From Macrostomum lignano (Eukaryota): a stretch of DNA of 64,000 nucleotides. A model generated the notes under the pieces. It searched no databases, was not told the DNA's origin, and worked only from the letters and a program-made list of their open reading frames with translations. Made by a program: the position numbers and the translations under genes. Below are positions 1 through 19,660 of the stretch, piece after piece. Location: NCBI GenBank assembly GCA_002269645.1, contig NIVC01000037.1, positions 1 to 64,000 on the forward strand. Direction: 5' to 3'. Within the stretch, counting starts at the first letter, position 1. Every line of letters starts with the position of its first letter.

Positions 1-365
1 GCTTCGTTCGGACGATACCGGTGCTCGAGAGAGGGCCGGCAGTCCATCTTTTTAGCGCTGGCGCGATTTGCAGCCATATGGCGTGATTATTTGGGTGCAC
101 TCACACTAAACTAAACTAGACAACTAACTAATGAGTCAGGAGGCACACAAAGTGCGCTCGCTGAGAGGGGTGGGGCGACTGCAAGATAAGACTAGGGGTG
201 GGGTAGAGATAAAAACAAATGTACAGTGGAATGGAAGGCTAACTAAAGTACTTTTAAGAGCTAAGCTAGGCTAGTCTAAACTATTCAACTTCTAATAAGC
301 CTTTCTAGGAAAGGCCTGCAAAAACTAGAGAATTCTCTTAAGAGTATCCCTCCACGGAAATCTTT
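1..365 (-). mobile_element. 5' end of a third tandem unit (U5 3' half, leader, start of ORF1), continuing off the left edge
   Basis: Position 1 matches 6456 and 10945. It includes the MAANRASAKK start codon region and the leader. Confidence 0.9.
297..365 (-). ncRNA. U5: U5 snRNA 3' half only (69 nt), abutting the retrotransposon 3' end
   Basis: Matches 11248-11316 apart from a few substitutions. The loop 1/5' half is replaced by the element tail (plus strand tcttt|gttgttaaaac). Confidence 0.9.
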
Positions 366-964
366 GTTGTTAAAACGAGGTGCCGTCGAAACCGGCGCGG
401 GTCAGTTCCGAAGAACTCTGCCGCAGTTATATTTTGTATTTGATCGAAAGAATTAAAAATATTTACAAGATTTCGATTTGAATATTTAATACGAATATTG
501 AAATTAAAAATATACATATATAAAACTATTTTTCAATATTTTGCAGTATTTTGCACGCATTTGGGGATAAAAAAGAGGGGAGGGAAATCCCGCACAAAGA
601 AGGGATCTAATAAAAACAGGACATCTAAAAAATACGTGCTTGATATTTGAAGGCCTATTGAGAGTAAAAGCAAGACATTTAAGTAAAAAAAAGAGATTAA
701 AAATGCAATAGCGCATATTTGAATTTAGTTGTAAAAATAGAATGAATATAGTAAAGGTGTAAAAAAGCAATTAGTAATATTTGTAGAGCAGTTGGGTAAA
801 AAACACAGTTGGGTAAATTGTAAAAAGAAACGCGAGGAGACATAGAGATTACCTAATCAGTCCTAATGACTGATCAACCGATCTCTGTCTCAGGCAGCAA
901 GTTTAGTTTTATTAGTTGCGTTTCAGAGCGTGGTCACTTCCGGTTTGGAAGGCTGGTAGCCAGC

Positions 965-3743
965 CTAACCCTGGGGTGGGAATCCCCTGTTTCTTTCCCG
1001 ACGCCTCATGGCATCCCAGAGGACATTGAGGACAGGGGTTCGGCCCGGAGCCCGAGGGGCTTCCGGCTCAATGTGGAAGCTGTGGAGCTTGGCTGCCCTC
1101 ATCTTGAGCAGCCAAGCCACCCCCAGCTGCTTGACCCTGTCTGCGAGCATCGGCATACCTGCCAGCTTGTGCAGGTATTCAATGCTGATGTAGGATGGCA
1201 CACCATAGCAGATACGGAGAGCCAGGTTTTGAATTTTCTGCAATTTGATTTGGTTAGTCGCACAGATTTGGCTCAGGATTGGCGCTCCGTAGGTGAGAGC
1301 GCTTTCTCCGTATGCCCTGTACAGCATTCTGAGGGTGGTGCTACTCAGCTTTGTCATTTTTGCAATTCTGCACAGTGACATTACAATGGCTCTGCTGGTA
1401 TCTGCCATGTTGTCCACATGTTTGTTCAGGCAGAGGCTCTGGTCAAGGAGGACACCCAGGAATTTCACCTCCTGACAGTACGGAACCTCAGTGTCCCCCA
1501 GATACAGTTTGGGTCGCAAGTCCATGCGCCTAGTGGGTTTGTAGTTGAAAGCGATTGCTTTGCTTTTACCGGCATTCAGTCTAATGCCTTGTTTACCGCA
1601 CCAGTCAAAGACTCGTCTGAGGTAGCTTTGAAGGGATGTTCGGAGCCCCGCAAAGGTGTCTGCTGAGGCCCAGACGGCCATGTCGTCTGCGAATTGACTG
1701 CGTTTGACGCTTGAGATGGTGGGAGTCGGCATTGAGCTGACGAAGAGGAGGTACAGGAGAGGGCTCAGAATGCCTCCCTGAGGGACGCCAGCCTGGATGG
1801 TGTGGGGATCGCTTAGGGCCCCCTCGATTCGAACCTGGATCTGTCTGTCTCGCAGGTAGTCAGACAGGATTCGCATGAGCATAGGTGGAAAACCATCGTG
1901 AGCATGCTATGCCTGATCTTGTCGTGCCAGGTGGAGTCAAAAGCTGCCTCTGCATCCAGGAAGACTGCAGCGGACTTTTTAGCTTTGCACTTTGCTACCA
2001 TGACATCTTGTGCCAGACGGCACAGGTTGTCATACGTGGAGTGAATTTTGCGGTAGGCGCATTGGTCATCTCCTAGGGTCTTATTATCCTCAAGGTGCTT
2101 GGTGAGTCTTTTTGCTATAAGCTTCTCAAACACTTTGCCCAGACATGAGGTCAGGCTGATTGGTCTGTAGGAGTTGGGGTGTTCGGGCGGTTTGTCCGGC
2201 TTGGGGATCATTGTCACCACAGCTTTCTTCCAGGCGCTGGGGAAAATCCCTCGACCGTAGCAGGCGTTGAAGAGGTTAGTGAGTCTCGTGATTGCCACCC
2301 CCTCTAAGCCCAGCTTGAGGACGCAGTTGGGAATCTTGTCCAGCCCGGGTGCTCCATCAGGCCTGAGGTGCTCCAGTTCCCACACTGTGTCTGCCACAGA
2401 GAATGCAGCATCAAGTGGGTGGGTCTCGATGGGTTCGATTCCCTCAGGAACGGGGTAGAATGAGGTGAGCTGTGCCACATCGGCCACCTCACGTTTGAGC
2501 TGTTCGCATGTGGAAGGGACTGGGCGCATCTTTGAGTCCAGAGTCTCGGCTAGAAGGTTAGCCTTCTCCAGATCTGTGTGCGCAGTTGTTTGACCCAGGG
2601 TGAGGCTGGGGATGGAGGTTGGCTTAAATTTGCCCATCAGCTTTTTAGTGTCATGCCAGAAATTCTTCACTTTCTTGTTCTTGCTGTTTTCAACAATACT
2701 CTCACAGACTTTGGTGAGCTTTCCATTCTGGAAGGAGTTAATTTCTCTCTTTATGCGATTTGCGAGCTGGTTTGCTTGGGTTTTGAAATTTTGATCCCGT
2801 GTGCTGAAGAAGAGGCGTCTGAGTCGTCTGCGCTCTTTGATCAGGTCGAGGATGTACTTGGGTAGGGCGTTTTTGGCACCACAGTCTGGTACTGTGGAGT
2901 CAATCACGGTGTGAATGGCCTTTGTGATGTGATCCACTTCGGCATTGATTTGGTCAGCATTTGATAATTTAATATTCTGATCTGAGCTCAAAGCTTCACT
3001 GATTTTGAGTCTGAACTCGTCCCAGTTTGTTTTTGAGAAGTTTTTGGGTCTGGGGGACCAGCCCATTTCTTCGACTGAATATTGAGCGTGAGGATTATAG
3101 GTAAGTGGTCACTGCCCAGGTCAGGACCCACCTCAAAGTCCTGCACAAATGGGAGAAAGTCCTCAGTGGCCAGGGCGAGGTCCAAGACATTCCTAGAAAT
3201 CAGCCCGTTTTTGGTGGCCAGTCTGGTGAACTGACCGGCTTGATTGAGAATGGTGGGCGAGGTGGGGCCCTCAGACAGCCAGTCGTGCAGCTGGTAGCCA
3301 GCCATGTTGTTGCTGCTGTCACCCCCGAGGAAGCGGTGTCTGGCATTGAGGTCACCCATGAGCACACTGCGCCTACGAGAGAGAAGATTTTTGAGTAGGT
3401 TCAGGTTCAGATGGTACGGTGCTGGAGACCTGTACACCAGAGCGAGATTGAAGTCAGGACCAGAGTTGTCAGACAAGCTCACGGTGCAAGAGATGGCTTC
3501 ATGGTTGACATTGTCATACTGCAAGCGCACATTTGTGAGTTTGACGCGAGGAGAGTGGGCAAGGAGAAGCCCGCGTTTGACTTGCGGGGTATCATACCGA
3601 ATGATGGAGTACCCGGGAATCTGGACAGTGTGACAACTTTTGAGAATGGTCTCAGAAAAGAGGGCAATGTCTAGCTCCTGACTGACGACCCACTGTGTCA
3701 GCTCTCTGATTTTCGGGTTGAATCCCCTGCAGTTTAAATGCAT
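965..3743 (-). CDS. Retrotransposon ORF2: APE endonuclease + reverse transcriptase, no RNase H seen (frameshifts at ~3050 and ~1898)
   Basis: Endonuclease motifs HLNCRG, SET, GDLNA, DLAL and SDHLPI. RT motifs KPDK..YRPISLTS, FLDAEAAFD, QGGILSPLLY, FADD and KFLGV. The Jockey-like C-terminus is QKIQNLALRICYGVPSY...LH. The ~1898 break is in frame in unit 2. Confidence 0.92.
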
Positions 3744-3829
3744 AATCTTCAGGGCTGTGGTTTGATTGTTTGAGTCTACAGTTAACGCACTGAAGTTTCA
3801 ATTCAAGTCTTGAGTTTAGCTGCCTGAGA

Positions 3830-6532
3830 CTAGGACTCAGTGGTCATGCCAGCCATGCCCGGCACTTCCTGGAGTGCAGCCCGCACAATGTCCTCAACCA
3901 TTTTACTGGTTGATTCCACAGTGAGGACCTCCCCAGGCGGTCGGGACAGGGCCTGCACAACCACTTGAGTCAGAGAGCGGGTGATCAGGGGCAACAGCAT
4001 GCTCACCACCGACATAAAGTCACTAAGCTGCAGCTGCACCGCCTGGCCGGCATCAGCTGACGGAGCAGTCGCATTGACATCAGACTCGGTCTCTGCCGCC
4101 GGAGCGCTCCTGGCATCATCGGTCACGATGACAAGCGGCCGGATCGCGGCGGGTACCGGCACCGTGCGCCTGCCTCGGCGGATCAGCCAGCCGCTGTCGG
4201 AGTCGTCGTCGGCGGCGGCGTCGTCGGTCTCACTTGACACTGGGGCAGCAGCGGCCGCAGCTTCCGCAGCTCGCGCCGCGGCTTTGGCCTCAGCAGCCGC
4301 TCTGGTCGCCTTGTCGTGCTCCGCCTTGGCGACGGTGCAGGCTCGACTGGTGGTTCGGTGCGAGCCGCCGCAGTTGGCGCAGACCGCTGGGCCCTCGTGC
4401 TGGCACTCCTTCCAGGAATGCTGGCCGCCGCAAATCCGGCAGCGCTGCTGCCCCCGACACTGGGCAGCGCGGTGGCCGAACTCCTGGCAGCGCTGGCATT
4501 GCAGAGCGCGGACCGGCTCGTCTGTGCGGCTGTCCTCGCAGTTGAACTTCAAGAAGTCGGTGCAGATGCCATCGCGGAGGCACTTCTCGTAGGTCATCGC
4601 CGACTTTGTGAAGATGCGCACGAACTGGGTTGCCTTCCCAGTCGCTCTGGCTCGGATTCTGTGGACGCTGACAATGTCCAGCTTGAGCGTGTCGCGCAAC
4701 AGGGTCGCGAAGTCAGCCTCCGAGAATGCGAGGGGCACCTCAGTAGCGACGAAGGTGCGTACCGGCTGCTGCTGCACTCTGTCGGGCCCTGTTCTGTTGT
4801 CCAGCGGTCGGCTCGGGCTGGACGGCGCTTTACGGGATGCTCGAGCAGCTTCTCCTCGCGCAGCGCGCCGCCCAGGAAGACGTTGTAGTCCCGCTCCGAC
4901 GCTGGAACACGAGATAGGCCGGCTGATTCGCCATCGGCGCAGTGTTGACGGCTCTAGCTTCGCCGGCAAAGTTGGTCTGCAGCCAGGCAACGAACTGCAT
5001 CAGCTTGTTGGCCGCGTCCCGGTGCACCTCAAAAACGATCGGCGGGATGGCAGCCTGGGGCCTTCTGGGCGGCGCAGGGCGCGCCGCAACCTGCGCGTAG
5101 GGCCGCGCTGCCGCAGCCGCCTGCGCGCTTGTCGCCGAAGCCGCCGCCGCACCGGCCGGCCAGGAAGCCGCCGAAGCCGCCGCCGCACCGGACGCCGCGC
5201 CGCGACCTCCTCGCCTGCCTCGCTGGTGGCCGCCACGGCCGCGCCGACCCCGATCGCCTTCGCGGTCTCGCGTCGCCGTCGCCTGCCGCTCCTGGGGCCT
5301 GTCGTCGCCCCGGCCGCCCTGGTCGTCGTCGTGGCCGCCTTGGTCGTCGTCCCGACCGCCTTGGTCGTCGCCGAATGGGCCGCCGTTTAGCGGCTGGCTG
5401 TAGGTCGGGTCATCCGGCAGAGCTCGCTTGCGCCGCAGCTCCGGCTTGGTGACACGGAATGTTAGCGAGATGCGGACGCCATTCTGAGAGTGGGCGGCGG
5501 GCACCTGGTGCTGCAGGCGTTTCTGGCAGTTTCCTGCCATCAGAATCAGCGAGCCTGGCAGCGTTGGAAAGCGGTGCGTCACGTTGCCGTCCCGACGGCG
5601 CAGCATGAACAGCCGCTCAGCGCCGAAGGACACGGTCGCGATCGTCGGCCTGTCGCCGAGCTCATCCTCATCGTCCGAGTGCCAGGGAATCCGGTCTCCC
5701 GGCTCGGTGTAGAAGTTCACCAACACGGAGTTGAACTTCGGGACATCGAACTGGGTATCATGGTAAATGAAGTCACGAATGTCTTCAATTACCTGATGCC
5801 AGTTAGATTTTCCTTCAGCTCAACCCCGCTGTAGGTGTACGACGGGCCGATCCAGTAGACGCGGCGCTGCTCACTCGGACGATGCTGAAAGGCCAGAGGC
5901 AGCAGGTCGGTGATCAGGCGCTCGTAGACTTGGTCCGCGACCTCGCTCAGGAACTTGGGCGCATAGATGATGGTGCTGTCGCTGGCGTAGATCGTCTGCT
6001 GACAGTCAGTCAAGTCAGGCTCATCAGGGAAGATGATTTGACTGATGTCAGCGTCCAGTTGCTCGGCAGGGGGCTTTGGCAGCGTCGAGGCCTGGTCTGC
6101 AGCCGATTGCTGGCGCTCCTCAGACGTCGGCGCTGCCGCTGCCGCACTGAGCTCGCTGGACTCGGCAGTTGGTGGCTCGGTGGTTGCTGCGGCCTCGTTG
6201 GATGGCAGGGCGCTTGTCTGGCCTGGCTCGTCGCAGTCGAGAGACATGCGCTGCTCTGCCTCTGCGCCTGCAGCCTCCGGCAGCTGCTCATTCTCTCGCA
6301 GGATCTCCTCTGCGTTGCGCAAGAGCTCGCCGGCCGGTGGGCTGATCGAGTGGCGGCCTTCCAGACTGCGTCGAGCTCGCATCAGGCCTGCTGGCGGCGG
6401 GCTCGCAGTCGATGGCTCAGCTGTCGGCGTCAGTCCAAGAAGCTGGCGACCGTAGGCTTCGTTCGGACGATACCGGTGCTCGAGAGAGGGCCGGCAGTCC
6501 ATCTTTTTAGCGCTGGCGCGATTTGCAGCCAT
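3830..6532 (-). CDS. Retrotransposon ORF1: acidic N-terminus + AlkB 2OG-Fe(II) dioxygenase + RGG linker + gag-like region with three CCHC knuckles (broken by frameshifts in this assembly)
   Basis: Built from ORF pieces 5789-6532, 4830-5726 and 3830-4990. Knuckles are CQRCQEFGHRAAQC, CRICGGQHSWKEC and CANCGGSHRTTSRAC. The break at ~5810 lies in an A4 run, and adding one A gives ...ELKEKSNWHQVIEDIRDFIYHDTQFDVPKFNSVLVNFY. In unit 2 the N- and C-termini are fused in one ORF (10107-11021). Confidence 0.8.
5450..5972 (-). CDS. alkB: AlkB-family (ALKBH2/ALKBH3-like) dioxygenase domain within ORF1
   Basis: Motifs YTYSG, FNSVLVNFY, WHSDDE (HxD), IATVSFGAERLF, GSLILM, QHQV (second His) and RISLTFR (RxxxxxR) occur in the canonical order. 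Confidence 0.92.
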
Positions 6533-6750
6533 ATGGCGTGATTATTTGGGTACACTCAAACTAAACCTAAACTACAACTAACTAATGAGTCAGGAGGCAC
6601 ACAAAGTGCGCTCGCTGAGAGGGGTGGGGCGACTGCAAGATAAGACTAGGGGTGGGGTAGAGATAAAAACAAATGTACAGTGGAATGGAAGGCTAACTAA
6701 AGTACTTTCAAGAGCTAAGCTAGGCTAGTCTAAACTATTCAACTTCCAAT

Positions 6751-6819
6751 AAGCCTTTCTAGGAAAGGCCTGCAAAAACTAGAGAATTCTCCTAAGAGTA
6801 TCCCTCCACGGAAATCTTT
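6751..6819 (-). ncRNA. U5: U5 snRNA 3' half only (69 nt), abutting the retrotransposon 3' end
   Basis: Same 69-nt segment and same junction (tcttt|gttgttaaaac) as at 365/366. Confidence 0.9.
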
Positions 6820-7417
6820 GTTGTTAAAACGAGGTGCCGTCGAAACCGGCGCGGGTCAGTTCCGAAGAACTCTGCCGCAGTTATATTTTGTATTTGATCG
6901 AAAGAATTAAAAATATTTACAAGATTTCGATTTGAATATTTAATACGAATATTGAAATAAAATGTACATATATAAAACTATTTTTCAATATTTTGCAGTA
7001 TTTTGCACGCATTTGGGGATAAAAAAGAGGGGAGGGAAATCCCGCACAAAGAAGGGATCTAATAAAAACAGGACATCTAAAAAATACGTGCTAGATATTT
7101 GAAGGCCTATTGAGAATAAAAGCAAGACAAATTAAGTAAAAAAAAGAGATTAAAAATGCAATAGCGCATATTTGAATTTAGTTGTAAAAATAGAATGAAT
7201 ATAGTAAAGGTGTAAAAAAGCAATTAGTAATATTTGTAGAGCAGTTGGGTAAAAAACACAGTTGGGAAAATTGTAAAAAGAAACGCGAGGAGACATAGAG
7301 ATTACCTAATCAGTCCTAATGACTGATCAACCGATCTCTGTCTCAGGCAGCAAGTTTAGTTTTATTAGTTGCGTTTCAGAGCGTGGTCACTTCCGGTTTG
7401 GAAGGCTGGTAGCCAGC

Positions 7418-10020
7418 CTAACCCTGGGGTGGGAATCCCCTGTTTCTTTCCCGACGCCTCATGGCATCCCAGAGGACATTGAGGACAGGGGTTCGGCCCG
7501 GAGCCCGAGGGGCTTCCGGCTCAATGTGGAAGCTGTGGAGCTTGGCTGCCCTCATCTTGAGCAGCCAAGCCACCCCCAGCTGCTTGACCCTGTCTGCGAG
7601 CATCGGCATACCTGCCAGCTTGTGCAGGTATTCAATGCTGATGTAGGATGGCACACCATAGCAGATACGGAGAGCCAGGTTTTGAATTTTCTGCAATTTG
7701 ATTTGGTTAGTCGCACAGATTTGGCTCAGGATTGGCGCTCCGTAGGTGAGAGCGCTTTCTCCGTATGCCCTGTACAGCATTCTGAGGGTGGTGCTACTCA
7801 GCTTTGTCATTTTTGCAATTCTGCACAGTGACATTACAATGGCTCTGCTGGTATCTGCCATGTTGTCCACATGTTTGTTCAGGCAGAGGCTCTGGTCAAG
7901 GAGGACACCCAGGAATTTCACCTCCTGACAGTACGGAACCTCAGTGTCCCCCAGATACAGTTTGGGTCGCAAGTCCATGCGCCTAGTGGGTTTGTAGTTG
8001 AAAGCGATTGCTTTGCTTTTACCGGCATTCAGTCTAATGCCTTGTTTACCGCACCAGTCAAAGACTCGTCTGAGGTAGCTTTGAAGGGATGTTCGGAGCC
8101 CCGCAAAGGTGTCTGCTGAGGCCCAGACGGCCATGTCGTCTGCGAATTGACTGCGTTTGACGCTTGAGATGGTGGGAGTCGGCATTGAGCTGACGAAGAG
8201 GAGGTACAGGAGAGGGCTCAGAATGCCTCCCTGAGGGACGCCAGCCTGGATGGTGTGGGGATCGCTTAGGGCCCCCTCGATTCGAACCTGGATCTGTCTG
8301 TCTCGCAGGTAGTCAGACAGGATTCGCATGAGCATAGGTGGAAAACCATCGGTGAGCATGCTATGCCTGATCTTGTCGTGCCAGGTGGAGTCAAAAGCTG
8401 CCTCTGCATCCAGGAAGACTGCAGCGGACTTTTTAGCTTTGCACTTTGCTACCATGACATCTTGTGCCAGACGGCACAGGTTGTCATACGTGGAGTGAAT
8501 TTTGCGGTAGGCGCATTGGTCATCTCCTAGGGTCTTATTATCCTCAAGGTGCTTGGTGAGTCTTTTTGCTATAAGCTTCTCAAACACTTTGCCCAGACAT
8601 GAGGTCAGGCTGATTGGTCTGTAGGAGTTGGGGTGTTCGGGCGGTTTGTCCGGCTTGGGGATCATTGTCACCACAGCTTTCTTCCAGGCGCTGGGGAAAA
8701 TCCCTCGACCGTAGCAGGCGTTGAAGAGGTTAGTGAGTCTCGTGATTGCCACCCCTCTAAGCCCAGCTTGAGGACGCAGTTGGGAATCTTGTCCAGCCCG
8801 GGTGCTCCATCAGGCCTGAGGTGCTCCAGTTCCCACACTGTGTCTGCCACAGAGAATGCAGCATCAAGTGGGTGGGTCTCGATGGGTTCGATTCCCTCAG
8901 GAACGGGGTAGAATGAGGTGAGCTGTGCCACCTCGGCCACCTCACGTTTGAGCTGTTCGCATGTGGAAGGGACTGGGCGCATCTTTGAGTCCAGAGTCTC
9001 GGCTAGAAGGTTAGCCTTCTCCAGATCTGTGTGCGCAGTTGTTTGACCCAGGGTGAGGCTGGGGATGGAGGTTGGCTTAAATTTGCCCATCAGCTTTTTA
9101 GTGTCTAGTAGCTCTTTGATCAGGTCGAGGATGTACTTGGGTAGGGCGTTTTTGGCACCACAGTCTGGTACTGTGGAGTCAATCACGGTGTGAATGGCCT
9201 TTGTGATGTGATCCACTTCGGCATTGATTTGGTCAGCATTTGATAATTTAATATTCTGATCTGAGCTCAAAGCTTCACTGATTTTGAGTCTGAACTCGTC
9301 CCAGTTTGTTTTGAGAAGTTTTTGGGTCTGGGGGACCAGCCCATTTCTTCGACTGAATATTGAGCGTGAGGATTATAGGTAAGTGGTCACTGCCCAGGTC
9401 AGGACCCACCTCAAAGTCCTGCACAAATGGGAGAAAGTCCTCAGTGGCCAGGGCGAGGTCCAAGACATTCCTAGAAATCAGCCCGTTTTTGGTGGCCAGT
9501 CTGGTGAACTGACCGGCTTGATTGAGAATGGTGGGCGAGGTGGGGCCCTCAGACAGCCAGTCGTGCAGCTGGTAGCCAGCCATGTTGTTGCTGCTGTCAC
9601 CCCGAGGAAGCGGTGTCTGGCATTGAGGTCACCCATGAGCACACTGCGCCTACGAGAGAGAAGATTTTTGAGTAGGTTCAGGTTCAGATGGTACGGTGCT
9701 GGAGACCTGTACACCAGAGCGAGATTGAAGTCAGGACCAGAGTTGTCAGACAAGCTCACGGTGCAAGAGATGGCTTCATGGTTGACATTGTCATACTGCA
9801 AGCGCACATTTGTGAGTTTGACGCGAGGAGAGTGGGCAAGGAGAAGCCCGCGTTTGACTTGCGGGGTATCATACCGAATGATGGAGTACCCGGGAATCTG
9901 GACAGTGTGACAACTTTTGAGAATGGTCTCAGAAAAGAGGGCAATGTCTAGCTCCTGACTGACGACCCACTGTGTCAGCTCTCTGATTTTCGGGTTGAAT
10001 CCCCTGCAGTTTAAATGCAT
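7418..10020 (-). pseudogene. ORF2 of the deleted unit (APE + RT), with frameshifts and an in-frame deletion of about 58 codons
   Basis: ORF pieces 9478-10020, 9275-9583, 8668-9270 and 7418-8752 match unit 1. LIKE-LL-DTKK replaces LIKE(60 aa)DTKK. Confidence 0.85.
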
Positions 10021-10106
10021 AATCTTCAGGGCTGTGGTTTGATTGTTTGAGTCTACAGTTAACGCACTGAAGTTTCAATTCAAGTCTTGAGTTTAGCTGC
10101 CTGAGA

Positions 10107-11021
10107 CTAGGACTCAGTGGTCATGCCAGCCATGCCCGGCACTTCCTGGAGTGCAGCCCGCACAATGTCCTCAACCATTTTACTGGTTGATTCCACAGTG
10201 AGGACCTCCCCAGGCGGTCGGGACAGGGCCTGCACAACCACTTGAGTCAGAGAGCGGGTGATCAGGGGCAACAGCATGCTCACCACCGACATAAAGTCAC
10301 TAAGCTGCAGCTGCACGATGTAGGTGTACGACGGGCCGATCCAGTAGACACGGCGCTGCTCACTCGGACGATGCTGAAAGGCCAGAGGCAGCAGGTCGGT
10401 GATCAGGCGCTCGTAGACTTGGTCCGCGACCTCGCTCAGGAACTTGGGCGCATAGATGATGGTGCTGTCGCTAGCGTAGATCGTCTGCTGACAGTCAGTC
10501 AAGTCAGGCTCATCAGGGAAGATGATTTGACTGATGTCAGCGTCCAGTTGCTCGGCAGGGGGCTTTGGCAGCGTCGAGGCCTGGTCTGCAGCCGATTGCT
10601 GGCGCTCCTCAGACGTCGGCGCTGCCGCTGCCGCACTGAGCTCGCTGGACTCGGCAGTTGGTGGCTCGGTGGTTGCTGCGGCCTCGTTGGATGGCAGGGC
10701 GCTTGTCTGGCCTGGCTCGTCGCAGTCGAGAGACATGCGCTGCTCTGCCTCTGCGCCTGCAGCCTCCGGCAGCTGCTCATTCTCTCGCAGGATCTCCTCT
10801 GCGTTGCGCAAGAGCTCGCCGGCCGGTGGGCTGATCGAGTGGCGGCCTTCCAGACTGCGTCGAGCTCGCATCAGGCCTGCTGGCGGCGGGCTCGCAGTCG
10901 ATGGCTCAGCTGTCGGCGTCAGTCCAAGAAGCTGGCGACCGTAGGCTTCGTTCGGACGATACCGGTGCTCGAGAGAGGGCCGGCAGTCCATCTTTTTAGC
11001 GCTGGCGCGATTTGCAGCCAT
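10107..11021 (-). CDS. Deleted ORF1 of unit 2 (304 aa, in-frame fusion lacking the AlkB core and zinc knuckles)
   Basis: ...GPSYTY|I|VQLQLSDF... joins unit-1 position ~5830 to ~4038. Confidence 0.8.
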   Translation of the reverse strand: MAANRASAKKMDCRPSLEHRYRPNEAYGRQLLGLTPTAEPSTASPPPAGLMRARRSLEGRHSISPPAGELLRNAEEILRENEQLPEAAGAEAEQRMSLDCDEPGQTSALPSNEAAATTEPPTAESSELSAAAAAPTSEERQQSAADQASTLPKPPAEQLDADISQIIFPDEPDLTDCQQTIYASDSTIIYAPKFLSEVADQVYERLITDLLPLAFQHRPSEQRRVYWIGPSYTYIVQLQLSDFMSVVSMLLPLITRSLTQVVVQALSRPPGEVLTVESTSKMVEDIVRAALQEVPGMAGMTTES

Positions 11022-11247
11022 ATGGCGTGATTATTTGGGTACACTCAAACTAAACCTAAACTACAACTAACTAATGAGTCAGGAGGCACACAATTACACA
11101 AAGTGCGCTCGCTGAGAGGGGTGGGGCGACTGCAAGATAAGACTAGGGGTGGGGTAGAGATAAAAACAAATGTACAGTGGAATGGAAGGCTAACTAAAGT
11201 ACTTTCAAGAGCTAAGCTAGGCTAGTCTAAACTATTCAACTTCCAAT

Positions 11248-11363
11248 AAGCCTTTCTAGGAAAGGCCTGCAAAAACTAGAGAATTCTCCTTAGAGTATCC
11301 CTCCACGGAAATCTTTAGTAAAAGGCGAAAGATTTAATCGTGGAATGAAGAGAAACCAGAGTT
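11248..11363 (-). ncRNA. U5: U5 spliceosomal snRNA, complete gene (116 nt)
   Basis: The reverse complement reads AACUCUGGUUUCUCUUC...AAAUCUUUCGCCUUUUACUAAAGAUUUCCGUGGAGGGAUAC...AGUUUUUG-CAGGCCUUUCCUAGAAAGGCUU. It shows the metazoan U5 5' stem, invariant loop 1 (GCCUUUUAC), an Sm-like site (AGUUUUUG) and a 3' stem-loop. Confidence 0.95.
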
Positions 11364-11589
11364 GAAGTTAAACAAGAGTGGGTAGCTTTTCTTATGTAGA
11401 AAATTCTGTAACCGCTTTAATTAAACATTCGTTTTCATAAAGCATTCGTTCCTGGCATGCCAATCTCTCTACTGACATAAGTGGAACTATTTGCGCATGA
11501 AAGCTAGTTTTTGTCTAGGCCTACGCAAACTGTTTTTTTCTATGCTGTAGAGAGTGGGAAGGATAGGCAGTAAAATTTCGGTAATTTTT

Positions 11590-12459
11590 TTAAAACTTCA
11601 TAGTAAGTCTTTTCTGAAGTAGCCACTGGTTAGCGAGGGTGATGACCTCTTCTTTGGACTCGAAGCGGTGCCCACGGAGTGGCCGCTTGAGCTGACGGAA
11701 TAGATGAAAATCGGAGGGTGCCAGGTCTGGTGAATAGGCCGGATGTGGGAGGATTTCGAACCCCGCAGTGGTGGCAGCATTCACCGCAACCTGGGCAGTG
11801 TGAGCTGAGGCATTGTCGTGAAGCAGCAAGGGGGCCAGCACTCAGCTTCCCCCGCTTCTTCTGGACCACTGCCTGACGAAACCGGCCCAGCTGTTCGGAG
11901 GACCAGACACCTGTGACAGTGTGCCTAACAGACAGTGACAGTGAGCAGGATCCCCTGACAGTCCCAGAAGAAACAGCCCTGGAATCTCGCTCAGACACGG
12001 GGGTCCATAGTGGCAGATCCAGCACTCATCCCCAGTAATGATTCATCGCTCAAATCCATCCAGGTTCTCATTGTAGGGGTCAGGCAGTAGTCCCGACGAG
12101 AAAGCATTCGGGGCGCTACTGCCTCAACTTTTATGGCTCACCCTGCCACGCTTGAATTCGTTGTAAAGTCGCTCGATGGTGCGCAGAGAGGGACAAGTTG
12201 TGGGGTACAGACTTTATCTTCTCCTCAATTGCAAAATTTAATATGAGGGCTCGGTATTTCTGCTTGTGTGTGCATTTTGCGGAAAATTCAGGGGGTGCTT
12301 AAAGTTCGTGCAGAAAAGATACAGTTAAAAAGACATGAAAAGAAAACACTGCACCCTATAAATTCTATATAAAAGTACTTTAAAAAGCCGAAAAAAATTA
12401 TGAAAAAAAGCTTTTGAAATGGCTGAACGGCAAAACTATAGATTTGAAGCACCCTCGTA
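11590..12459 (-). mobile_element. Degenerate mariner (Tc1/mariner) transposon remnant
   Basis: Fragments PSLRTIERLYNEFKRGR, IITGDECWI, FWDCQGILL, HDNASAHT and HPAYSPDLAPSDFHLF. One terminus reads TA-CGAGGGTGCTTCAAA (minus strand from 12459). There are stops and deletions, and the second TIR was not found. Confidence 0.85.
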
Positions 12460-12981
12460 TTTGACAGTTGACAAGACGGACTGAATATGGGCGCCCCCCC
12501 CTACCCAGTTAATAATTTGGAGTTATTGCGCAAAACTTAGTCGTGTTTGAACAGTGTCATGGAATTACGAGCTACATGGTGTATGCTAATACCCTATAAT
12601 TACATATCTTAGCTATGCGTGTATAATATAGGCCATTCTTAACTATTGTTCCAGCCTATCGATTGGCTCACTCGCTTTCTTTAATCAATCCAGCTCTTGC
12701 CTCAAGTAGTGTCGATTGCCATCATTACAATCAATCTATTGTCAACAATGGTCAGAGCAAACTTATTAGTCGCCTAACTTATTAAAATTAATTCTTGTAG
12801 TTTCAAGATCTTACGCTTGAGCTGTTGAATTTTAGAAATATGTTGATGAGTTTTAAAATTATTAGAAATTGTTGCTAAGGCGTGTAAGGAGTAGAACCAG
12901 TTGATAAATTCGACTTGGTTGCCACAATGGCGCCACGGTTTGTCTCAGTTCAGCTAATGAGGAATCTCTGAGGAAGCCAAG

Positions 12982-13700
12982 AGAGACAGAATTGCAGAGA
13001 GACAGAATTGCAGAGAGACAGAATTGCAGAGAGACAGAATTGCAGAGAGACAGAATTGCAGACAGACAAAATTGCAGAGACAGAATTGCAGAGAGACAGA
13101 ATCGCAGACAGACAGAATTGCAGACAGATAGAATTGCAGAAATACAGAGTTGCAGACAGACAGAATTGCAGGCAGACAGAATCGCAGACAGATAGAATTG
13201 CAGAAATACAGAGTTGCAGACGGACAGAATCGCAGACAGACAGACTTGCAGACAGATAGAATTGCAGAAATACAGAGTTGCAGACAGACAGAATTGCAGA
13301 CAGACAGAATTGCAGACATACAGAATTGCAGACAGACAGAATTGCAGACAGACAGAATTGCAGGCAGACAGAATCGCAGGCAGACAGAATTGCAGGCAGA
13401 CAGAATCGCAGGCAGACAGAATTGCAGACAGACAGAATCGCAGGCAGACAGAATTGCAGACAGACAGAATTGCAGACAGACAGAATTGCAGACAGACAGA
13501 ATCTCAGGCAGACAGAATTGCAGACATACAGAATTGCAGACAGAAAAAATTGCAGACAGACAGAATTGCAGACATACAGAATTGCAGACAGACAGAATTG
13601 CAGACAGACAGAATCGCAGGCAAACAGAATCGCAGACAGAAGCAGACAGGCGGCACAGAAGCAGACAGGCGGCACAGAAGCAGACAGGCGGCAGAAATTG
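12982..13700. repeat. 14-bp minisatellite (GACAGAATTGCAGA-like), ending in three ~19-bp units
   Basis: Direct reading of tandem units. Confidence 0.9.
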
Positions 13701-14212
13701 CACCGCAGCGCAAGGGAAATCCAAGCCGCAATCCGCAGCTCACGCACAGCATCAGCAAAGTTAATTCGGCTTCAGCAGGCGGCCCGTTTCCATCTAGCTC
13801 TATCAAAGCCAGGCACAAATGAAGCCAGCTTGTTGGTGCATAATGAGCTGAGCTCCAATTCTCGTGGGGATTTATCTCCCCCAATATACGCTCGTACATA
13901 TTTAGCATACAGGACCTATGGGATAATTCCATTCCGGTCTTCGCCCGCGCCTTCCCCACTTGATTTGGCCCCTTCTCCCCTCTCTAAAAGCCAAATATTG
14001 CGCAGGAGGAAGCTTTAGCGGGGTTGACGGGAGGGCCGGAGACAAAAAATAGGTCTTTGTCCCCCCCCCGAAATCCCCCGCGCCCAACCCGATCCTTGCG
14101 AACCCCCCGCCGCCACAGCTTGCCAATTTTCCCTTTCGATCCCGTTTGGCCTCTTTTACTCCTCAACTATTTTTAATCATTTGGCCGCTTTACTGTTTCA
14201 CTGGGAATTTGC

Positions 14213-14690
14213 AGCATCTGACACGGATGACACTTACAGCATCTGACACAGATGGACACTTACAGCATCTGACACAGATGGACACTTACAGCATCTGACA
14301 CAGATGGACACTTACAGCATCTGACAAAGATAGACACTTACAGCATCTGACAAAGATAGACACTTACAGCATCTGACACAGATGGACACTTACAGCATCT
14401 GACACAGATAGACACTTACATCATCTGACACAGATGGACACTTACAGCATCTGACAAAGATAGACACTTACAGCATCTGACAAAGATAGACACTTACAGC
14501 ATCTGACACAGATGGACACTTACAGCATCTGACACAGATATGACACTTACAGCATCTGACACTGATAGACACTTACAGCATCGGACACAGATGGACACTT
14601 ACAGCATCTGACAAAGATGGACGCTTACAGCATGACAAAGATGACACTTACAGCATCTGACACAGATAGACACTTACAGCATCTGACACA
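14213..14690. repeat. 26-bp minisatellite (CACTTACAGCATCTGACACAGATGGA)
   Basis: Tandem units, each with an internal CATCT/AGATG inverted repeat. Confidence 0.9.
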
Positions 14691-14964
14691 AATGGTTTTC
14701 GTAGCGCTTTGATACAGTTTGACATGAATTGGGAATATTTGAGCATCGGATATGTACCGTTTTAAAAAGCGCTTTGTTTCATTTCATTTGTTTAATGCTA
14801 TTAAGTACCGATATAGCCATCAAATTTTCCTTTTTGGCTTGTATTATTTTGTGCCAACTTTTCAAAAAGGATGAAGTCTGAATCTTACTACTGTCAGTAG
14901 GTAAAAAGTTATATATAAACATATACTCGTAAATAAACAAATTAACTACTCGTATATACCACAG

Positions 14965-16995: not shown

Positions 16996-17745
16996 AACTT
17001 CAGTTCTGTGCTCAGTGGAAACAGCAAATGATGTGGACTAGAGAGATCATAAGGAATCCGAATAAGCAGAATTAGCTAGCTAATTAAAATTAAATAAGCG
17101 AGAAAATTGAAATTATTTTTTTGAAACTAAACTTGGATAAGCAGTAAAAACATCGAAACTTATAATAATAGTATAAGAAGAAAGGATAATTCAACAAAAC
17201 AGGAATGATGACGCTGGGACAATCCAATACGTAAAGATTCGAAAACAGATGAAACGCGCACACGCTGTCAGTGCTGCGGAGATGTGTTGCTAATAGCCCT
17301 CACCGATGAGAATTCAATGCGCAAGCGGTTCCATCTTCAGAAGATTGGCTGGAATAGATAAATTGATATAGTAGGCTAGATCTATTCCAGATTCCTGGCC
17401 AATATAAAACCGGATACTAACTGAAGACTTATATTTGTAATTCTAAGTGCCAGACAGTATCTGCAACTTATGCCTTAGGCTTACACATCTGTGAGTGCCT
17501 ATGTGTGAATCTGGTCTGATAAACAGAAGTTGTGCATTTATAACAGCCTTAGTTGTTAGTCACGTGAACTACGCTGGGCACAGGGCCAGTTGGGCACCCC
17601 GCTTGGCATTCAGCCAGTCAGCAAGGGGTGAGAGAATTTAGCATCTTTGCAACAACTTCCTAGCTCAGTTCACTTAAAGAGCGGTTCTTATAGATTTTGT
17701 CTTGCTTGCTGTTATTACGGGTGATTACCGGTATATTGCATGTGG

Positions 17746-19660
17746 TTTAGTTTGATGGGAGATTGTTGAGTTTAGTTTGATGAGAGATTGTTGAGTTTAG
17801 TTTGATAGGAGATTGTTGAGTTTAGTTTGATGGGAGATTGTTGAGTTTAGTTTGATGGGAGATTGTTGAGTTTAGTTTGATGGGAGATTGTTGAGTTTAG
17901 TTTGATGAGAGATTGTTGAGTTTAGTTTGATAGGAGATTGTTGAGTTTAGTTTGATGGGAGATTGTTGAGTTTAGTTTGATGGGAGATTGTTGAGTTTAG
18001 TTTGATGGGAGATTGTTGAGTTTAGTTTGATGGGAGATTGTTGAGTTTAGTTTGATGGGAGATTGTTGAGTTTAGTTTGATGGGAGATTGTTGAGTTTAG
18101 TTTGATGGGAGATTGTTGAGTTTAGTTTGATGGGAGATTGTTGAGTTTAGTTTGATAGGAGATTGTTGAGTTTAGTTTGATGGGAGATTGTTGAGTTTAG
18201 TTTGATGGGAGATTGTTGAGTTTAGTTTGATGGGAGATTGTTGAGTTTAGTTTGATGGGAGATTGTTGAGTTTAGTTTGATGGGAGATTGTTGAGTTTAG
18301 TTTGATGGGAGATTGTTGAGTTTAGTTTGATGGGAGATTGTTGAGTTTAGTTTGATGGGAGATTGTTGAGTTTAGTTTGATGGGAGATTGTTGAGTTTAG
18401 TTTGATGGGAGATTGTTGAGTTTAGTTTGATGGAGATTGTTGAGTTTAGTTTGATGGGAGATTGTTGAGTTTAGTTTGATGGGAGATTGTTGAGTTTAGT
18501 TTGATGGGAGATTGTTGAGTTTAGTTTGATGGGAGATTGTTGAGTTTAGTTTGATGGGAGATTGTTGAGTTTAGTTTGATGGGAGATTGTTGAGTTTAGT
18601 TTGATGGGAGATTGTTGAGTTTAGTTTGATGGGAGATTGTTGAGTTTAGTTTGATGGGAGATTGTTGAGTTTAGTTTGATGGGAGATTGTTGAGTTTAGT
18701 TTGATGGGAGATTGTTGAGTTTAGTTTGATGGGAGATTGTTGAGTTTAGTTTGATGGGAGATTGTTGAGTTTAGTTTGATGAGAGATTGTTGAGTTTAGT
18801 TTGATGGGAGATTGTTGAGTTTAGTTTGATGGGAGATTGTTGAGTTTAGTTTGATGGAGATTGTTGAGTTTAGTTTGATAGGAGATTGTTGAGTTTAGTT
18901 TGATAGGAGATTGTTGAGTTTAGTTTGATGGGAGATTGTTGAGTTTAGTTTGATAGGAGATTGTTGAGTTTAGTTTGATGGGAGATTGTTGAGTTTAGTT
19001 TGATGGGAGATTGTTGAGTTTAGTTTGATGGGAGATTGTTGAGTTTAGTTTGATGGGAGATTGTTGAGTTTAGTTTGATGGGAGATTGTTGAGTTTAGTT
19101 TGATGGGAGATTGTTGAGTTTAGTTTGATGGGAGATTGTTGAGTTTAGTTTGATGGGAGATTGTTGAGTTTAGTTTGATGGGAGATTGTTGAGTTTAGTT
19201 TGATGGGAGATTGTTGAGTTTAGTTTGATGGGAGATTGTTGAGTTTAGTTTGATGGGAGATTGTTGAGTTTAGTTTGATGGGAGATTGTTGAGTTTAGTT
19301 TGATGGGAGATTGTTGAGTTTAGTTTGATGGGAGATTGTTGAGTTTAGTTTGATGGGAGATTGTTGAGTTTAGTTTGATGGGAGATTGTTGAGTTTAGTT
19401 TGATGGGAGATTGTTGAGTTTAGTTTGATGGGAGATTGTTGAGTTTAGTTTGATGGGAGATTGTTAAGTTTAGTTTGATGGGAGATTGTTGAGTTTAGTT
19501 TGATGGGAGATTGTTGAGTTTAGTTTGATGGGAGATTGTTGAGTTTAGTTTGATGGGAGATTGTTGAGTTTAGTTTGATGGGAGATTGTTGAGTTTAGTT
19601 TGATGGGAGATTGTTGAGTTTAGTTTGATGGGAGATTGTTGAGTTTAGTTTGATGGGAGA
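17746..19660. repeat. 25-bp minisatellite (GAGTTTAGTTTGATGGGAGATTGTT), very homogeneous
   Basis: Period 25, beginning about 20 bp past the sortilin-like stop codon. Confidence 0.95.

What the first reader, a model, noticed from the sequence alone, without database searches (positions are those of the whole stretch)
5450..5972. Apparently catalytically intact AlkB dioxygenase inside LINE ORF1
Seen: the HxD (WHSD), distal His (QHQ), RxxxxxR (RISLTFR) and N-x-Y (NFY) motifs lie between the ORF1 start and the CCHC knuckles. Known: ALKBH2/3-type enzymes oxidatively remove 1-meA and 3-meC from single-stranded nucleic acid, and some plant RNA viruses carry AlkB in their replicase polyproteins. LINE ORF1 accessory domains are usually esterase, PHD or RRM types. 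Inference: the RNP carries its own repair or demethylase activity to clear RT-blocking methyl adducts, or to counter host RNA methylation, on the template RNA or first-strand cDNA.
Basis: partly seen in the sequence, partly recalled or inferred. Interest (0 to 1): 0.85.

Follow-up and report, generated by a model that had tools for sequence, protein, structure and literature searches.

The report
AlkB repair domain inside flatworm LINE
A jumping gene (LINE retrotransposon) of the flatworm Macrostomum lignano carries an AlkB/ALKBH3-type enzyme domain, which strips methyl damage from nucleic acids, fused to its RNA-binding protein; the fusion is kept in several distantly related elements, so these elements probably clean their own RNA before copying it, although the copy in this window is broken by single-base deletions.

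Summary
On the minus strand, window 6001-5454 encodes a complete AlkB-type Fe(II)/2-oxoglutarate dioxygenase fold (Pfam PF13532, E=7e-23; best solved relative human ALKBH3). N-x-Y, HxD, distal His and RxxxxxR are all present. It lies between the ORF1 ATG (6532) and a tandem-RRM plus three-CCHC core, upstream of an APE+RT ORF2. The host is Macrostomum lignano.

The fusion is a family trait, not a one-off capture. Sister copies in the public M. lignano assembly read from AlkB into the first CCHC knuckle in one frame. Intact ORF1s of 757-962 aa with the same architecture occur in other LINE lineages, one followed by an intact APE+RT ORF2. AlkB is the best-conserved block of ORF1, and its catalytic residues are invariant.

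The window copy is broken as assembled. It has five one-base deletions, one inside AlkB at about 5803, and all are homopolymer contractions, so some may be assembly errors.

The enzyme type is ALKBH2/3-like, not ALKBH5-like. The likeliest role is removal of RT-blocking m1A/m3C from the element's RNA or cDNA. This is inferred and untested. I found no published description. An AlkB ORF also sits next to a probable Penelope-like RT/GIY-YIG gene.

The parts
6533..6819 (-). 5' UTR of LINE copy A. The 5' end of the element is at about 6819.
   Evidence: The same sequence starts at 11316 in copy B, where it abuts unique flank, and at the flank junction in L011.
3830..6532 (-). ORF1 of copy A, about 900 aa when read through. 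Order: low-complexity N-terminus, AlkB, G/D/R/A-rich linker, two RRM folds, three CCHC knuckles, C-terminal tail. It is broken by three one-base deletions.
   Evidence: Three-frame translation. The five-copy DNA alignment shows the indels. Sister protein P0189 reads from AlkB into the first knuckle in one frame.
5454..6001 (-). AlkB-type Fe(II)/2-oxoglutarate dioxygenase fold of the ALKBH2/3 type.
   Evidence: Pfam PF13532 E=7.4e-23; PDB ALKBH3 E=2e-23; AF2 pLDDT 89; Foldseek ALKBH3 E=2e-16, TM 0.75-0.78.
5709..5717 (-). N-x-Y (NFY), which stabilises 2-oxoglutarate.
   Evidence: Coordinates. N and Y are invariant in six ORF1 lineages.
5673..5681 (-). HxD (H-S-D within WHSDDE), two of the three iron ligands.
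   Evidence: Coordinates. Aligns to WHSDDE of ALKBH3. Invariant in the family.
5499..5513 (-). QHQVP, which holds the distal iron-binding His.
   Evidence: Coordinates. Aligns to QHRVP of ALKBH3. The His is invariant.
5454..5474 (-). RISLTFR (RxxxxxR), which binds 2-oxoglutarate.
   Evidence: Coordinates. Aligns to RVNLTFR of ALKBH3. Both Arg are invariant.
5802..5804 (-). One-base deletion (AAA to AA) inside the AlkB domain. Intact copies read ELKENL(N/D)WHQ.
   Evidence: Alignment column 737 is shared with L011b and absent from L011a, L010 and L008. P0038 and P0188 are uninterrupted here.
4810..4906 (-). Two further one-base deletions (CCC to CC at about 4905 and about 4812) that shift the frame within the first RRM region.
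   Evidence: Columns 1637 and 1732 are private to the window copy.
4499..5042 (-). Two RRM-fold domains of ORF1p.
   Evidence: The AF2 model shows two beta-alpha-beta-beta-alpha-beta units with pLDDT 84-91. Foldseek top hits are tandem-RRM proteins: nucleolin, Pub1, HuD/HuR and UP1.
4337..4498 (-). Three CCHC zinc knuckles: CX2CX4HX4C, CX2CX3HX4C and CX2CX3HX6C.
   Evidence: Read directly from the sequence. The Pfam zf-CCHC hit is weak, E=0.0065 and below the cut-off.
965..3743 (-). ORF2 of copy A: APE endonuclease plus reverse transcriptase, with no RNase H. It is split into three pieces by two one-base deletions (about 3057 and 1899).
   Evidence: Pfam Exo_endo_phos_2 and RVT_1. Indels. Sister copy L011a has an uninterrupted 926-aa ORF2.
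6820..11316 (-). LINE copy B, directly head-to-tail with copy A and about 99% identical. It has two internal deletions. One removes the C-terminal two-thirds of AlkB through the CCHC region, leaving an AlkB remnant at 10529-10320.
   Evidence: Self-BLAST; tblastn; ORF 10107-11021.
1..365 (-). 5' UTR and the first codons of a third tandem copy (C), which runs off the window start.
   Evidence: Positions 1-365 match 6456-6819 and 10945-11316.

Best explanation
The window holds a head-to-tail array of a Macrostomum lignano LINE. Its ORF1 protein is a Type-I LINE 'gag' (two RRMs plus three CCHC knuckles) with an ALKBH2/3-type AlkB dioxygenase fused at the N-terminal side.

Shown:
- The domain is a complete AlkB fold with every cofactor-binding residue.
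- In sister copies it is in the same reading frame as the RRM/CCHC core.
- The same architecture is found, intact, in several LINE lineages whose ORF1 and ORF2 are only 27-50% identical to this one.
- AlkB is the most conserved block of ORF1.

Inferred:
- ORF1p coats the element's own RNA in cis, so the fused enzyme sits at high local concentration on the template.
- There it oxidatively removes N1-methyladenine and N3-methylcytosine (and perhaps related lesions) from single-stranded RNA or from first-strand cDNA.
- Those bases block or derail reverse transcriptases, so removing them would raise the yield of full-length copies.

The copy in the window cannot make this protein as assembled, because of five one-base deletions. 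All five are homopolymer contractions, so at least some may be assembly errors.
For: Enzyme identity:
- Pfam E=7e-23 and ALKBH3 E=2e-23 with aligned NxY, HxD, H and RxxxxxR.
- AF2 pLDDT 89. Foldseek gives ALKBH3/ALKBH2 at E=1e-16 to 1e-13, against E. coli AlkB at 1e-9 and ALKBH5 at 8e-8.

One ORF:
- M. lignano protein P0189 (PAA49615.1) runs from AlkB through the linker and RRMs into the first knuckle.
- The majority reading of five copies is open from the ATG into the first knuckle; a tied indel column then breaks it, and the window's own frame continues from there to the ORF1 stop.

Family trait:
- An exhaustive HMMER search puts proteins of 696-962 aa with AlkB+RRM+CCHC architecture at the top.
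- L001 carries an intact 843-aa AlkB-ORF1 followed by an intact 948-aa APE+RT ORF2 that is 37-41% identical to the window's ORF2.
- M. lignano itself probably has at least three such families.

Constraint:
- Mean pairwise identity is AlkB 42.5%, RRM 35.7%, CCHC 33%, linker 17%.
- The catalytic residues are invariant.

ORF1p nature: tandem RRM folds.

Established knowledge (not tested here): m1A and m3C stop reverse transcriptases, AlkB treatment relieves this (the basis of AlkB-assisted tRNA sequencing), and ALKBH3 acts on single-stranded DNA and RNA.
Against: - No activity, expression or retrotransposition data exist.
- The window copy is frameshifted inside AlkB, and that deletion is shared with a copy in an independent assembly record, so it may be real.
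- No copy examined has a fully open ORF1.
- All four M. lignano loci examined share the same flank. They are paralogous copies of one tandem array, not independent insertions, so recent mobility of this family is not shown.
- dN/dS could not be measured: the pairs available are either identical or saturated.
- Substrate is inferred from fold rank only. ALKBH3-type enzymes have been reported to act on other methylated bases as well.
- The neighbour-joining grouping of the retroelement AlkBs has only 6% bootstrap support, so a single origin is not proven.
Confidence: 0.6

Rival explanations
1. The domain is an m6A eraser. It strips N6-methyladenosine from the LINE transcript (or from host mRNAs) to escape m6A-dependent decay or silencing, as proposed for the AlkB of orchid Ty3/Gypsy elements.
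For: A retrotransposon-encoded AlkB with in vitro m6A demethylase activity exists (PMC9289625). m6A is known to modulate retroelement RNA fate (PMC7873242 listed; background).
Against: The orchid protein is ALKBH5-like. The flatworm domain matches ALKBH3/ALKBH2 by sequence, with no ALKBH5 or FTO hit at E<=0.01. By fold, ALKBH5 scores E=8e-8 against 2e-16 for ALKBH3.
Confidence: 0.2
2. The enzyme acts on something other than the element's own RNA. Candidates are single-stranded target DNA or cDNA at the integration site, host tRNAs (to favour translation), or host nucleic-acid sensors.
For: ALKBH2/3-type enzymes work on DNA as well as RNA (PDB complexes with ssDNA and dsDNA are the top structural matches). 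The sequence does not fix the substrate.
Against: The fusion to an RNA-coating RRM/CCHC protein, kept in all lineages, argues for action within the RNP. There is no separate targeting domain.
Confidence: 0.13
3. The domain is a passenger: a host ALKBH exon captured once and now decaying, without use to the element.
For: The window copy is frameshifted inside AlkB, copy B has lost most of the domain, and all the M. lignano loci seen are one paralogous array.
Against: The same fusion occurs in at least five divergent LINE lineages with intact ORFs. AlkB is the best-conserved ORF1 block and its catalytic residues are invariant. Host AlkB paralogues are no closer than about 35-38% identity.
Confidence: 0.04
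4. It is an artefact of assembly or of my joining of frames, and AlkB is a separate gene next to the LINE.
For: The window needs three frame corrections to link AlkB with CCHC.
Against: Independent records carry the fusion in one uninterrupted ORF: P0189 in GCA_002269645.1, and P0040, P0042, P0047 and P0050 in Logan contigs found in several sequencing runs.
Confidence: 0.03

Closest known systems
Human ALKBH3 (and ALKBH2) oxidative demethylases
   Same: Same fold, including the nucleotide-recognition lid. Same NxY, WHSDDE, QHxVP and RxNLTFR motifs. Best sequence match (E=2e-23) and best structural match (TM 0.75-0.78).
   Different: Only about 30-40% identical. It is not a free-standing cellular enzyme but the N-terminal module of a retrotransposon RNA-binding protein. 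Activity and substrate are untested.
AlkB domains in replicase polyproteins of plant RNA viruses (Alpha-/Betaflexiviridae, Closteroviridae)
   Same: A selfish RNA-based replicon carries its own AlkB, thought to repair methylation damage of its genome (summarised in PMC9289625). Structural matches to such replicases were found.
   Different: Only 16-28% identity in structure-based alignment, further away than the cellular ALKBH2/3. The host molecule is a LINE RNP that must be reverse-transcribed, not an RdRp replicon. The domain is fused to the RNA chaperone, not the polymerase.
paALKBH5-like protein of Phalaenopsis Ty3/Gypsy (Ogre/Tat) elements (PMC9289625)
   Same: A retrotransposon-encoded AlkB with conserved cofactor residues. 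The same idea of a self-encoded nucleic-acid demethylase.
   Different: That one is ALKBH5-type (an m6A eraser), sits in a separate extra ORF, occurs in an LTR element and is a recent acquisition in one plant genus. This one is ALKBH2/3-type, fused within ORF1p, occurs in non-LTR elements of animals and is shared by deeply diverged lineages.
Type I LINE ORF1p (RRM(s) directly upstream of CCHC knuckles; I, Jockey, R1, Tad1, plant L1, some L2/CR1)
   Same: Two RRM folds followed by three CCHC knuckles, upstream of an APE+RT ORF2. The definition is taken from PMC4120745.
   Different: The known accessory ORF1 modules are coiled coil/CTD, PHD and esterase (a 448-element survey), plus a viral SF1 helicase in some insect Jockey elements (PMC5563155). 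An AlkB module is not among them.

Membership tests
AlkB family of Fe(II)/2-oxoglutarate dioxygenases (Pfam PF13532), ALKBH2/3 subgroup | Score above the curated family threshold | tested here: met
   82.2 bits against a cut-off of 31.2, E=7.4e-23.
AlkB family of Fe(II)/2-oxoglutarate dioxygenases (Pfam PF13532), ALKBH2/3 subgroup | Double-stranded beta-helix core with N-terminal nucleotide-recognition lid | tested here: met
   AF2 pLDDT 89, pTM 0.87. Foldseek aligns 204-215 columns to ALKBH3/ALKBH2 at TM 0.75-0.78.
AlkB family of Fe(II)/2-oxoglutarate dioxygenases (Pfam PF13532), ALKBH2/3 subgroup | HxD...H iron triad, RxxxxxR and NxY 2-oxoglutarate contacts | tested here: met
   All are present and aligned to ALKBH3. 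All are invariant in six ORF1 lineages, and the His, Asp and His are also invariant in the 40-sequence alignment.
AlkB family of Fe(II)/2-oxoglutarate dioxygenases (Pfam PF13532), ALKBH2/3 subgroup | Closer to ALKBH2/3 than to other AlkB subgroups (E. coli AlkB, ALKBH5, ALKBH6, ALKBH8) | tested here: met
   phmmer against PDB returns only ALKBH3 and ALKBH2 at E<=0.01. Foldseek E=1e-16 to 1e-13 for these against 1e-10 to 1e-7 for the others.
AlkB family of Fe(II)/2-oxoglutarate dioxygenases (Pfam PF13532), ALKBH2/3 subgroup | Uninterrupted coding sequence in this copy | tested here: not met
   A one-base deletion at about 5803. The feature is met in sister copies L011a, L010 and L008 and in proteins P0038, P0188 and P0189.
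AlkB family of Fe(II)/2-oxoglutarate dioxygenases (Pfam PF13532), ALKBH2/3 subgroup | Oxidative demethylase activity on m1A/m3C | not testable with these tools
   This needs a biochemical assay.
Non-LTR (LINE) retrotransposon with Type I ORF1p | ORF2 with apurinic-type endonuclease followed by reverse transcriptase | tested here: met
   Exo_endo_phos_2 E=1.6e-12 and RVT_1 E=9e-18 and 2e-14, with no RNase H.
Non-LTR (LINE) retrotransposon with Type I ORF1p | At least one RRM immediately upstream of CCHC knuckle(s) in ORF1 | tested here: met
   Two RRM-topology domains in the AF2 model, and tandem-RRM proteins are the top Foldseek hits. Three CCHC motifs are read from the sequence.
Non-LTR (LINE) retrotransposon with Type I ORF1p | Dispersed copies with target-site duplications, 5' truncation or a 3' tail (evidence of retrotransposition) | tested here: inconclusive
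   Only head-to-tail arrays at loci that share one flank were seen. The 3' end has no poly(A). A genome-wide census is not possible with these tools.
Non-LTR (LINE) retrotransposon with Type I ORF1p | Assignment to a named clade (Jockey, CR1, L2, I, R1 and others) by RT phylogeny | tested here: inconclusive
   The word-indexed search with ORF2 returned only two unnamed proteins. No reference RT set was at hand.
ALKBH5-type m6A erasers (as in the orchid Gypsy AlkB) | Nearest relatives are ALKBH5/ALKBH9B/10B | tested here: not met
   There is no ALKBH5 hit by sequence. By fold it ranks 43rd, at E=8e-8.
Viral replicase AlkB domains | Nearest relatives are viral AlkBs | tested here: not met
   BFVD hits are 16-28% identical, and the plant-virus replicases score E=1e-11 to 1e-9. 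Cellular and retroelement AlkBs are 35-58% identical.

The most novel reading that the evidence does not exclude
A self-encoded ALKBH3-like 'template cleaner' is a required part of the retrotransposition machinery of a whole lineage of animal LINEs. The same module has also been taken up by Penelope-like elements. If so, base methylation of RNA (m1A/m3C, whether damage or host-installed) would be a significant natural barrier to reverse transcription in animals, one that retroelements have evolved to remove themselves.
Probability: 0.3. Interest if true: 0.85.

Novelty: new variant of a known kind. Interest (0 to 1): 0.7.

Why it matters
LINE ORF1 proteins are regarded as RNA-binding chaperones. 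Their accessory modules are few: coiled coil/CTD, PHD, esterase, and rarely a viral helicase. A conserved nucleic-acid repair dioxygenase fused to ORF1p would be a new enzymatic activity in a LINE RNP.

It would give a direct handle on an open question: do RNA base modifications or alkylation damage limit reverse transcription in vivo? The case parallels the AlkB domains of plant RNA viruses and the m6A eraser of orchid Gypsy elements, but with a different AlkB subtype, a different element class and an animal host. That points to repeated recruitment of AlkB by RNA-based selfish elements.

Macrostomum lignano is transgenesis-capable (PMC5730564, listed), so the idea is testable. The proteins are already in public databases, labelled only as 'Fe2OG dioxygenase domain-containing protein' with no mention of a LINE context.

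Tried and rejected
1. Exact-protein look-up of the window's 247-aa N-terminal ORF found nothing.
2. Word-indexed homologue searches were poor. The AlkB domain returned only bacterial or plant AlkBs of about 40% identity. The ORF1 profile returned 6 proteins. The ORF2 profile returned 2 unnamed proteins, so the LINE clade stays unassigned. The exhaustive HMMER search is what found the family.
3. dN/dS could not be measured. Identical-protein contigs from different runs are identical in DNA. P0040 and P0191 differ by one base. The M. lignano copies differ by only 4 substitutions in AlkB, 2 at third codon positions and 2 amino-acid changing. Between families the divergence is saturated. I used block-wise conservation instead.
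4. In a neighbour-joining tree of 159 AlkB domains, the six retroelement AlkBs form an exclusive group in the point estimate, but in only 12 of 200 bootstraps. With the C-terminal 150 residues alone they do not group. The origin (host ALKBH3-like, bacterial or other) is therefore unresolved. BLAST bit scores favour retroelement AlkBs only modestly: 112-144 bits against 76-115.
5. The organism behind the Logan runs SRR316283xx-4xx and SRR19430222 could not be identified. There is no nucleotide similarity to the M. lignano loci.
6. I considered independent insertions of the family in M. lignano and rejected the idea. L008, L010 and L011 share the window's flank.
7. Nine full-text literature queries found no description of AlkB in a LINE or Penelope-like element (one further query was rejected for syntax). 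Subscription journals and Repbase Reports are not covered.
Full report
**What is in the window**

The feature lies on the minus strand. An ATG at 6532 opens a reading frame that runs down to a stop at 3830 once three frame changes are allowed for. In order, it encodes:
- a low-complexity N-terminus;
- an AlkB-like domain;
- a Gly/Asp/Arg/Ala-rich linker;
- a region I show below to be two RRM folds;
- three CCHC knuckles (4498-4337);
- a C-terminal tail.

About 90 bases further on, a second frame (3743-965) encodes an APE-type endonuclease and a reverse transcriptase with no RNase H. This is a LINE with a two-ORF layout. A second copy, about 99% identical, follows head-to-tail at 11316-6820, and the start of a third lies at 365-1. 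Copy B has an internal deletion that removes the C-terminal two-thirds of AlkB together with the RRM/CCHC region.

**Checking the observation**

The conceptually joined domain scores 82 bits (E=7e-23) on Pfam 2OG-FeII_Oxy_2, against a cut-off of 31. In the PDB it matches human ALKBH3 at E=2e-23 and ALKBH2 at about 1e-15, and no other AlkB subtype at E<=0.01. The alignment to ALKBH3 pairs NFY with NLY, WHSDDE with WHSDDE, QHQVP with QHRVP and RISLTFR with RVNLTFR. Window coordinates are 5717-5709, 5684-5667, 5513-5499 and 5474-5454.

An AlphaFold2 model built on a 40-sequence alignment is confident (pLDDT 89, pTM 0.87). Foldseek places it on ALKBH3 and ALKBH2 over about 200 columns (E=2e-16 to 1e-13, TM 0.75-0.78). 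E. coli AlkB (1e-9), ALKBH6 (5e-10), ALKBH5 (8e-8) and ALKBH8 rank clearly lower.

**State of this copy**

I aligned ORF1 and ORF2 of copy A with four sister copies from the public M. lignano assembly. The window copy carries five one-base deletions: about 5803 (inside AlkB), 4905, 4812, 3057 and 1899. Every one shortens a mononucleotide run: AAA to AA, CCC to CC twice, C6 to C5, and CC to C.

Every sister copy has its own set of one to four single-base indels in ORF1, and across the five copies indel columns are about as frequent as substitution columns. That pattern is typical of long-read consensus errors. However, the 5803 deletion is shared with a copy in an independent record (L011b), and the 3057 deletion is shared with window copy B, so some may be real.

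As assembled, translation from the ATG ends after 247 aa, before any catalytic residue. 'Catalytically intact' is therefore true of the motifs but not of this copy's reading frame.

**Host and sister copies**

An exhaustive HMMER search of 1.84 billion representative proteins found 98-100% identical proteins. These are Macrostomum lignano hypothetical proteins PAA54533.1, PAA54534.1, PAA61448.1 and PAA49615.1. The window aligns at 99.1% over 12 kb to NIVC01003829.1 of GCA_002269645.1.
- P0038, P0188 and P0190 read through the AlkB domain without interruption.
- P0189 (688 aa) continues in one frame from AlkB through the linker and both RRMs into the first knuckle.
- The majority reading of the five copies is open from the ATG into the first knuckle. 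A tied indel column then breaks it, and the window's own frame continues from there to the ORF1 stop.
- L011a has an uninterrupted 926-aa ORF2 and a single one-base deletion in ORF1.

AlkB and 'gag' therefore belong to one ORF1. All three public loci share the window's flank (88-97% identity over window 11317-14695) and the same tandem arrangement. They are paralogous versions of one array, not independent insertions.

**A family trait, not a one-off capture**

Directly below the self hits, the HMMER list holds long proteins with the same architecture at 36-42% identity:
- P0040 (962 aa), P0042 (757 aa), P0047 (892 aa) and P0050 (843 aa), from Logan assemblies;
- P0045/P0192 (696/861 aa), P0041 and P0043, from M. 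lignano;
- P0046, 58% identical; its archive number lies among those of the M. lignano entries, so it is probably M. lignano too.

Contig L001 carries the intact 843-aa AlkB-ORF1, then an intact 948-aa APE+RT ORF2 that is 37-41% identical to the window's ORF2. L004, L005 and L012 show the start of an ORF2 after the other AlkB-ORF1s.

In a six-lineage ORF1 alignment, the residues that bind iron and 2-oxoglutarate are all invariant. AlkB is also the best-conserved block: mean pairwise identity is 42.5%, against 35.7% for the RRMs, 33% for the knuckles, and 17-27% for the linker, N-terminus and tail. AlkB divergence between the window element and L001 (about 35-38%) matches that of APE and RT (37-41%). 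This is what one expects if the domain was already present in their common ancestor and has been under comparable constraint since.

**ORF1p type**

An AlphaFold2 model of the region between the linker and the knuckles shows two beta-alpha-beta-beta-alpha-beta units with pLDDT 84-91. Its best PDB matches are tandem-RRM proteins: nucleolin RBD1-2, Pub1, HuD/HuR and hnRNP A1 UP1. With the three knuckles, this fits the Type I ORF1p definition quoted in PMC4120745. That survey of 448 Jockey-superfamily ORF1s lists RRM, CCHC, coiled coil/CTD, PHD and esterase. PMC5563155 adds a viral SF1 helicase. Neither mentions AlkB.

**Origin**

The origin is unresolved. With the full domain, the six retroelement AlkBs form an exclusive group in a neighbour-joining tree of 159 sequences, but bootstrap support is only 6%. 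BLAST scores to retroelement AlkBs (112-144 bits) are only modestly above those to cellular ones (76-115 bits). The cellular set includes M. lignano's own ALKBH3-like protein P0121, a C2H2-AlkB protein P0049, and P0202. Viral AlkBs are further away, at 16-28% identity.

**How it most likely works**

Two facts are established. ALKBH3-type enzymes remove 1-methyladenine and 3-methylcytosine from single-stranded DNA and RNA. Those bases stall reverse transcriptases. LINE ORF1 proteins bind the RNA that encodes them. I infer that the fused AlkB clears such lesions from the template RNA, or from nascent cDNA, inside the RNP.

An m6A-eraser role is the main rival. It has a precedent in the ALKBH5-like protein of orchid Gypsy elements (PMC9289625), but the subtype evidence here points away from ALKBH5.

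**Novelty**

None of the nine full-text queries that ran turned up a description of AlkB in LINE or Penelope-like elements. The public proteins carry only automatic 'Fe2OG dioxygenase domain-containing protein' labels. I rate it a new variant of a known kind: a LINE ORF1p with a new enzymatic module, and another case of AlkB recruitment by an RNA-based selfish element. My coverage excludes subscription journals and Repbase Reports.

**Side finding**

In contig L003 (run SRR19430222), a 1012-aa protein with an AlkB domain of the same type (37% identical, with the same WYGP.Y.Y and NSCL.NFY signatures) lies directly upstream of an ORF with weak RVT_1 and GIY-YIG matches, E=0.002 each. That domain pair is the hallmark of Penelope-like elements. 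This suggests the module has moved between retroelement classes, but the domain calls are weak.

Noticed in passing
L003:2120-7398 (Logan SRR19430222): A 1012-aa ORF with an AlkB domain of the same type as the LINE ones, but with no CCHC knuckles, sits just upstream of an ORF with RVT_1 and GIY-YIG matches (E=0.002 each). That domain pair is typical of Penelope-like elements, so AlkB may also have been recruited by a second retroelement class.
   Followed up: partly
window 1-11316 (minus strand); also L008, L010, L011: The LINE copies are joined directly head-to-tail: the 3' end ...TTTTAACAA abuts the 5' end CAAAGATTTCCG..., with no poly(A) and no spacer. The same array with the same flank recurs at three or more loci in the M. 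lignano assembly. Whether the array arose by unequal crossing-over, by successive insertions into the element's own end, or by genome duplication is open.
   Followed up: partly
proteins P0049 (PAA75158.1), P0121/P0201, P0061/P0202 of M. lignano: M. lignano has several cellular AlkB paralogues. One has N-terminal C2H2 zinc fingers and shares the W.GP.Y.Y signature seen in the LINE AlkBs. It could be the donor of the LINE domain or a domesticated copy of it.
   Followed up: partly
window 35817-37861 (minus strand), with neighbouring ORFs at 38496-39011, 40236-40769 and 40886-41896: A protein-primed type-B DNA polymerase (Pfam DNA_pol_B_2, E=4e-18 and 5e-13), split into two ORFs. This suggests a decayed Polinton/Maverick-like element or a similar large DNA transposon. 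The neighbouring ORFs have no Pfam match.
   Followed up: partly
window 20753-21220 and 25769-26221 (minus strand): Exons of a sortilin/VPS10-domain receptor gene (Sortilin_C E=2e-29; Sortilin-Vps10 E=3e-25). The intron between them is filled by a 3.9-kb minisatellite (21238-25129, 58-bp unit) and a (CAGT)140 array (20198-20757).
   Followed up: partly
window 11590-11841 (minus strand): A fragment of a Tc1/mariner-type DDE transposase (DDE_3, E=4e-7) in the flank next to the LINE array.
   Followed up: no
window 12980-62264 (many sites): The density of minisatellites is very high, with periods of 14-58 bp and arrays of up to 1.9 and 3.9 kb (for example 17745-19660, 98% identical 25-mers). This produces long spurious ORFs in all frames.
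   Followed up: no
L001:4346-4717: A 123-aa ORF with no Pfam match lies between ORF1 and ORF2 of the intact AlkB-LINE. Similar ORFs of 123-124 aa occur in L002, L006 and L007. The window element has no counterpart.
   Followed up: no
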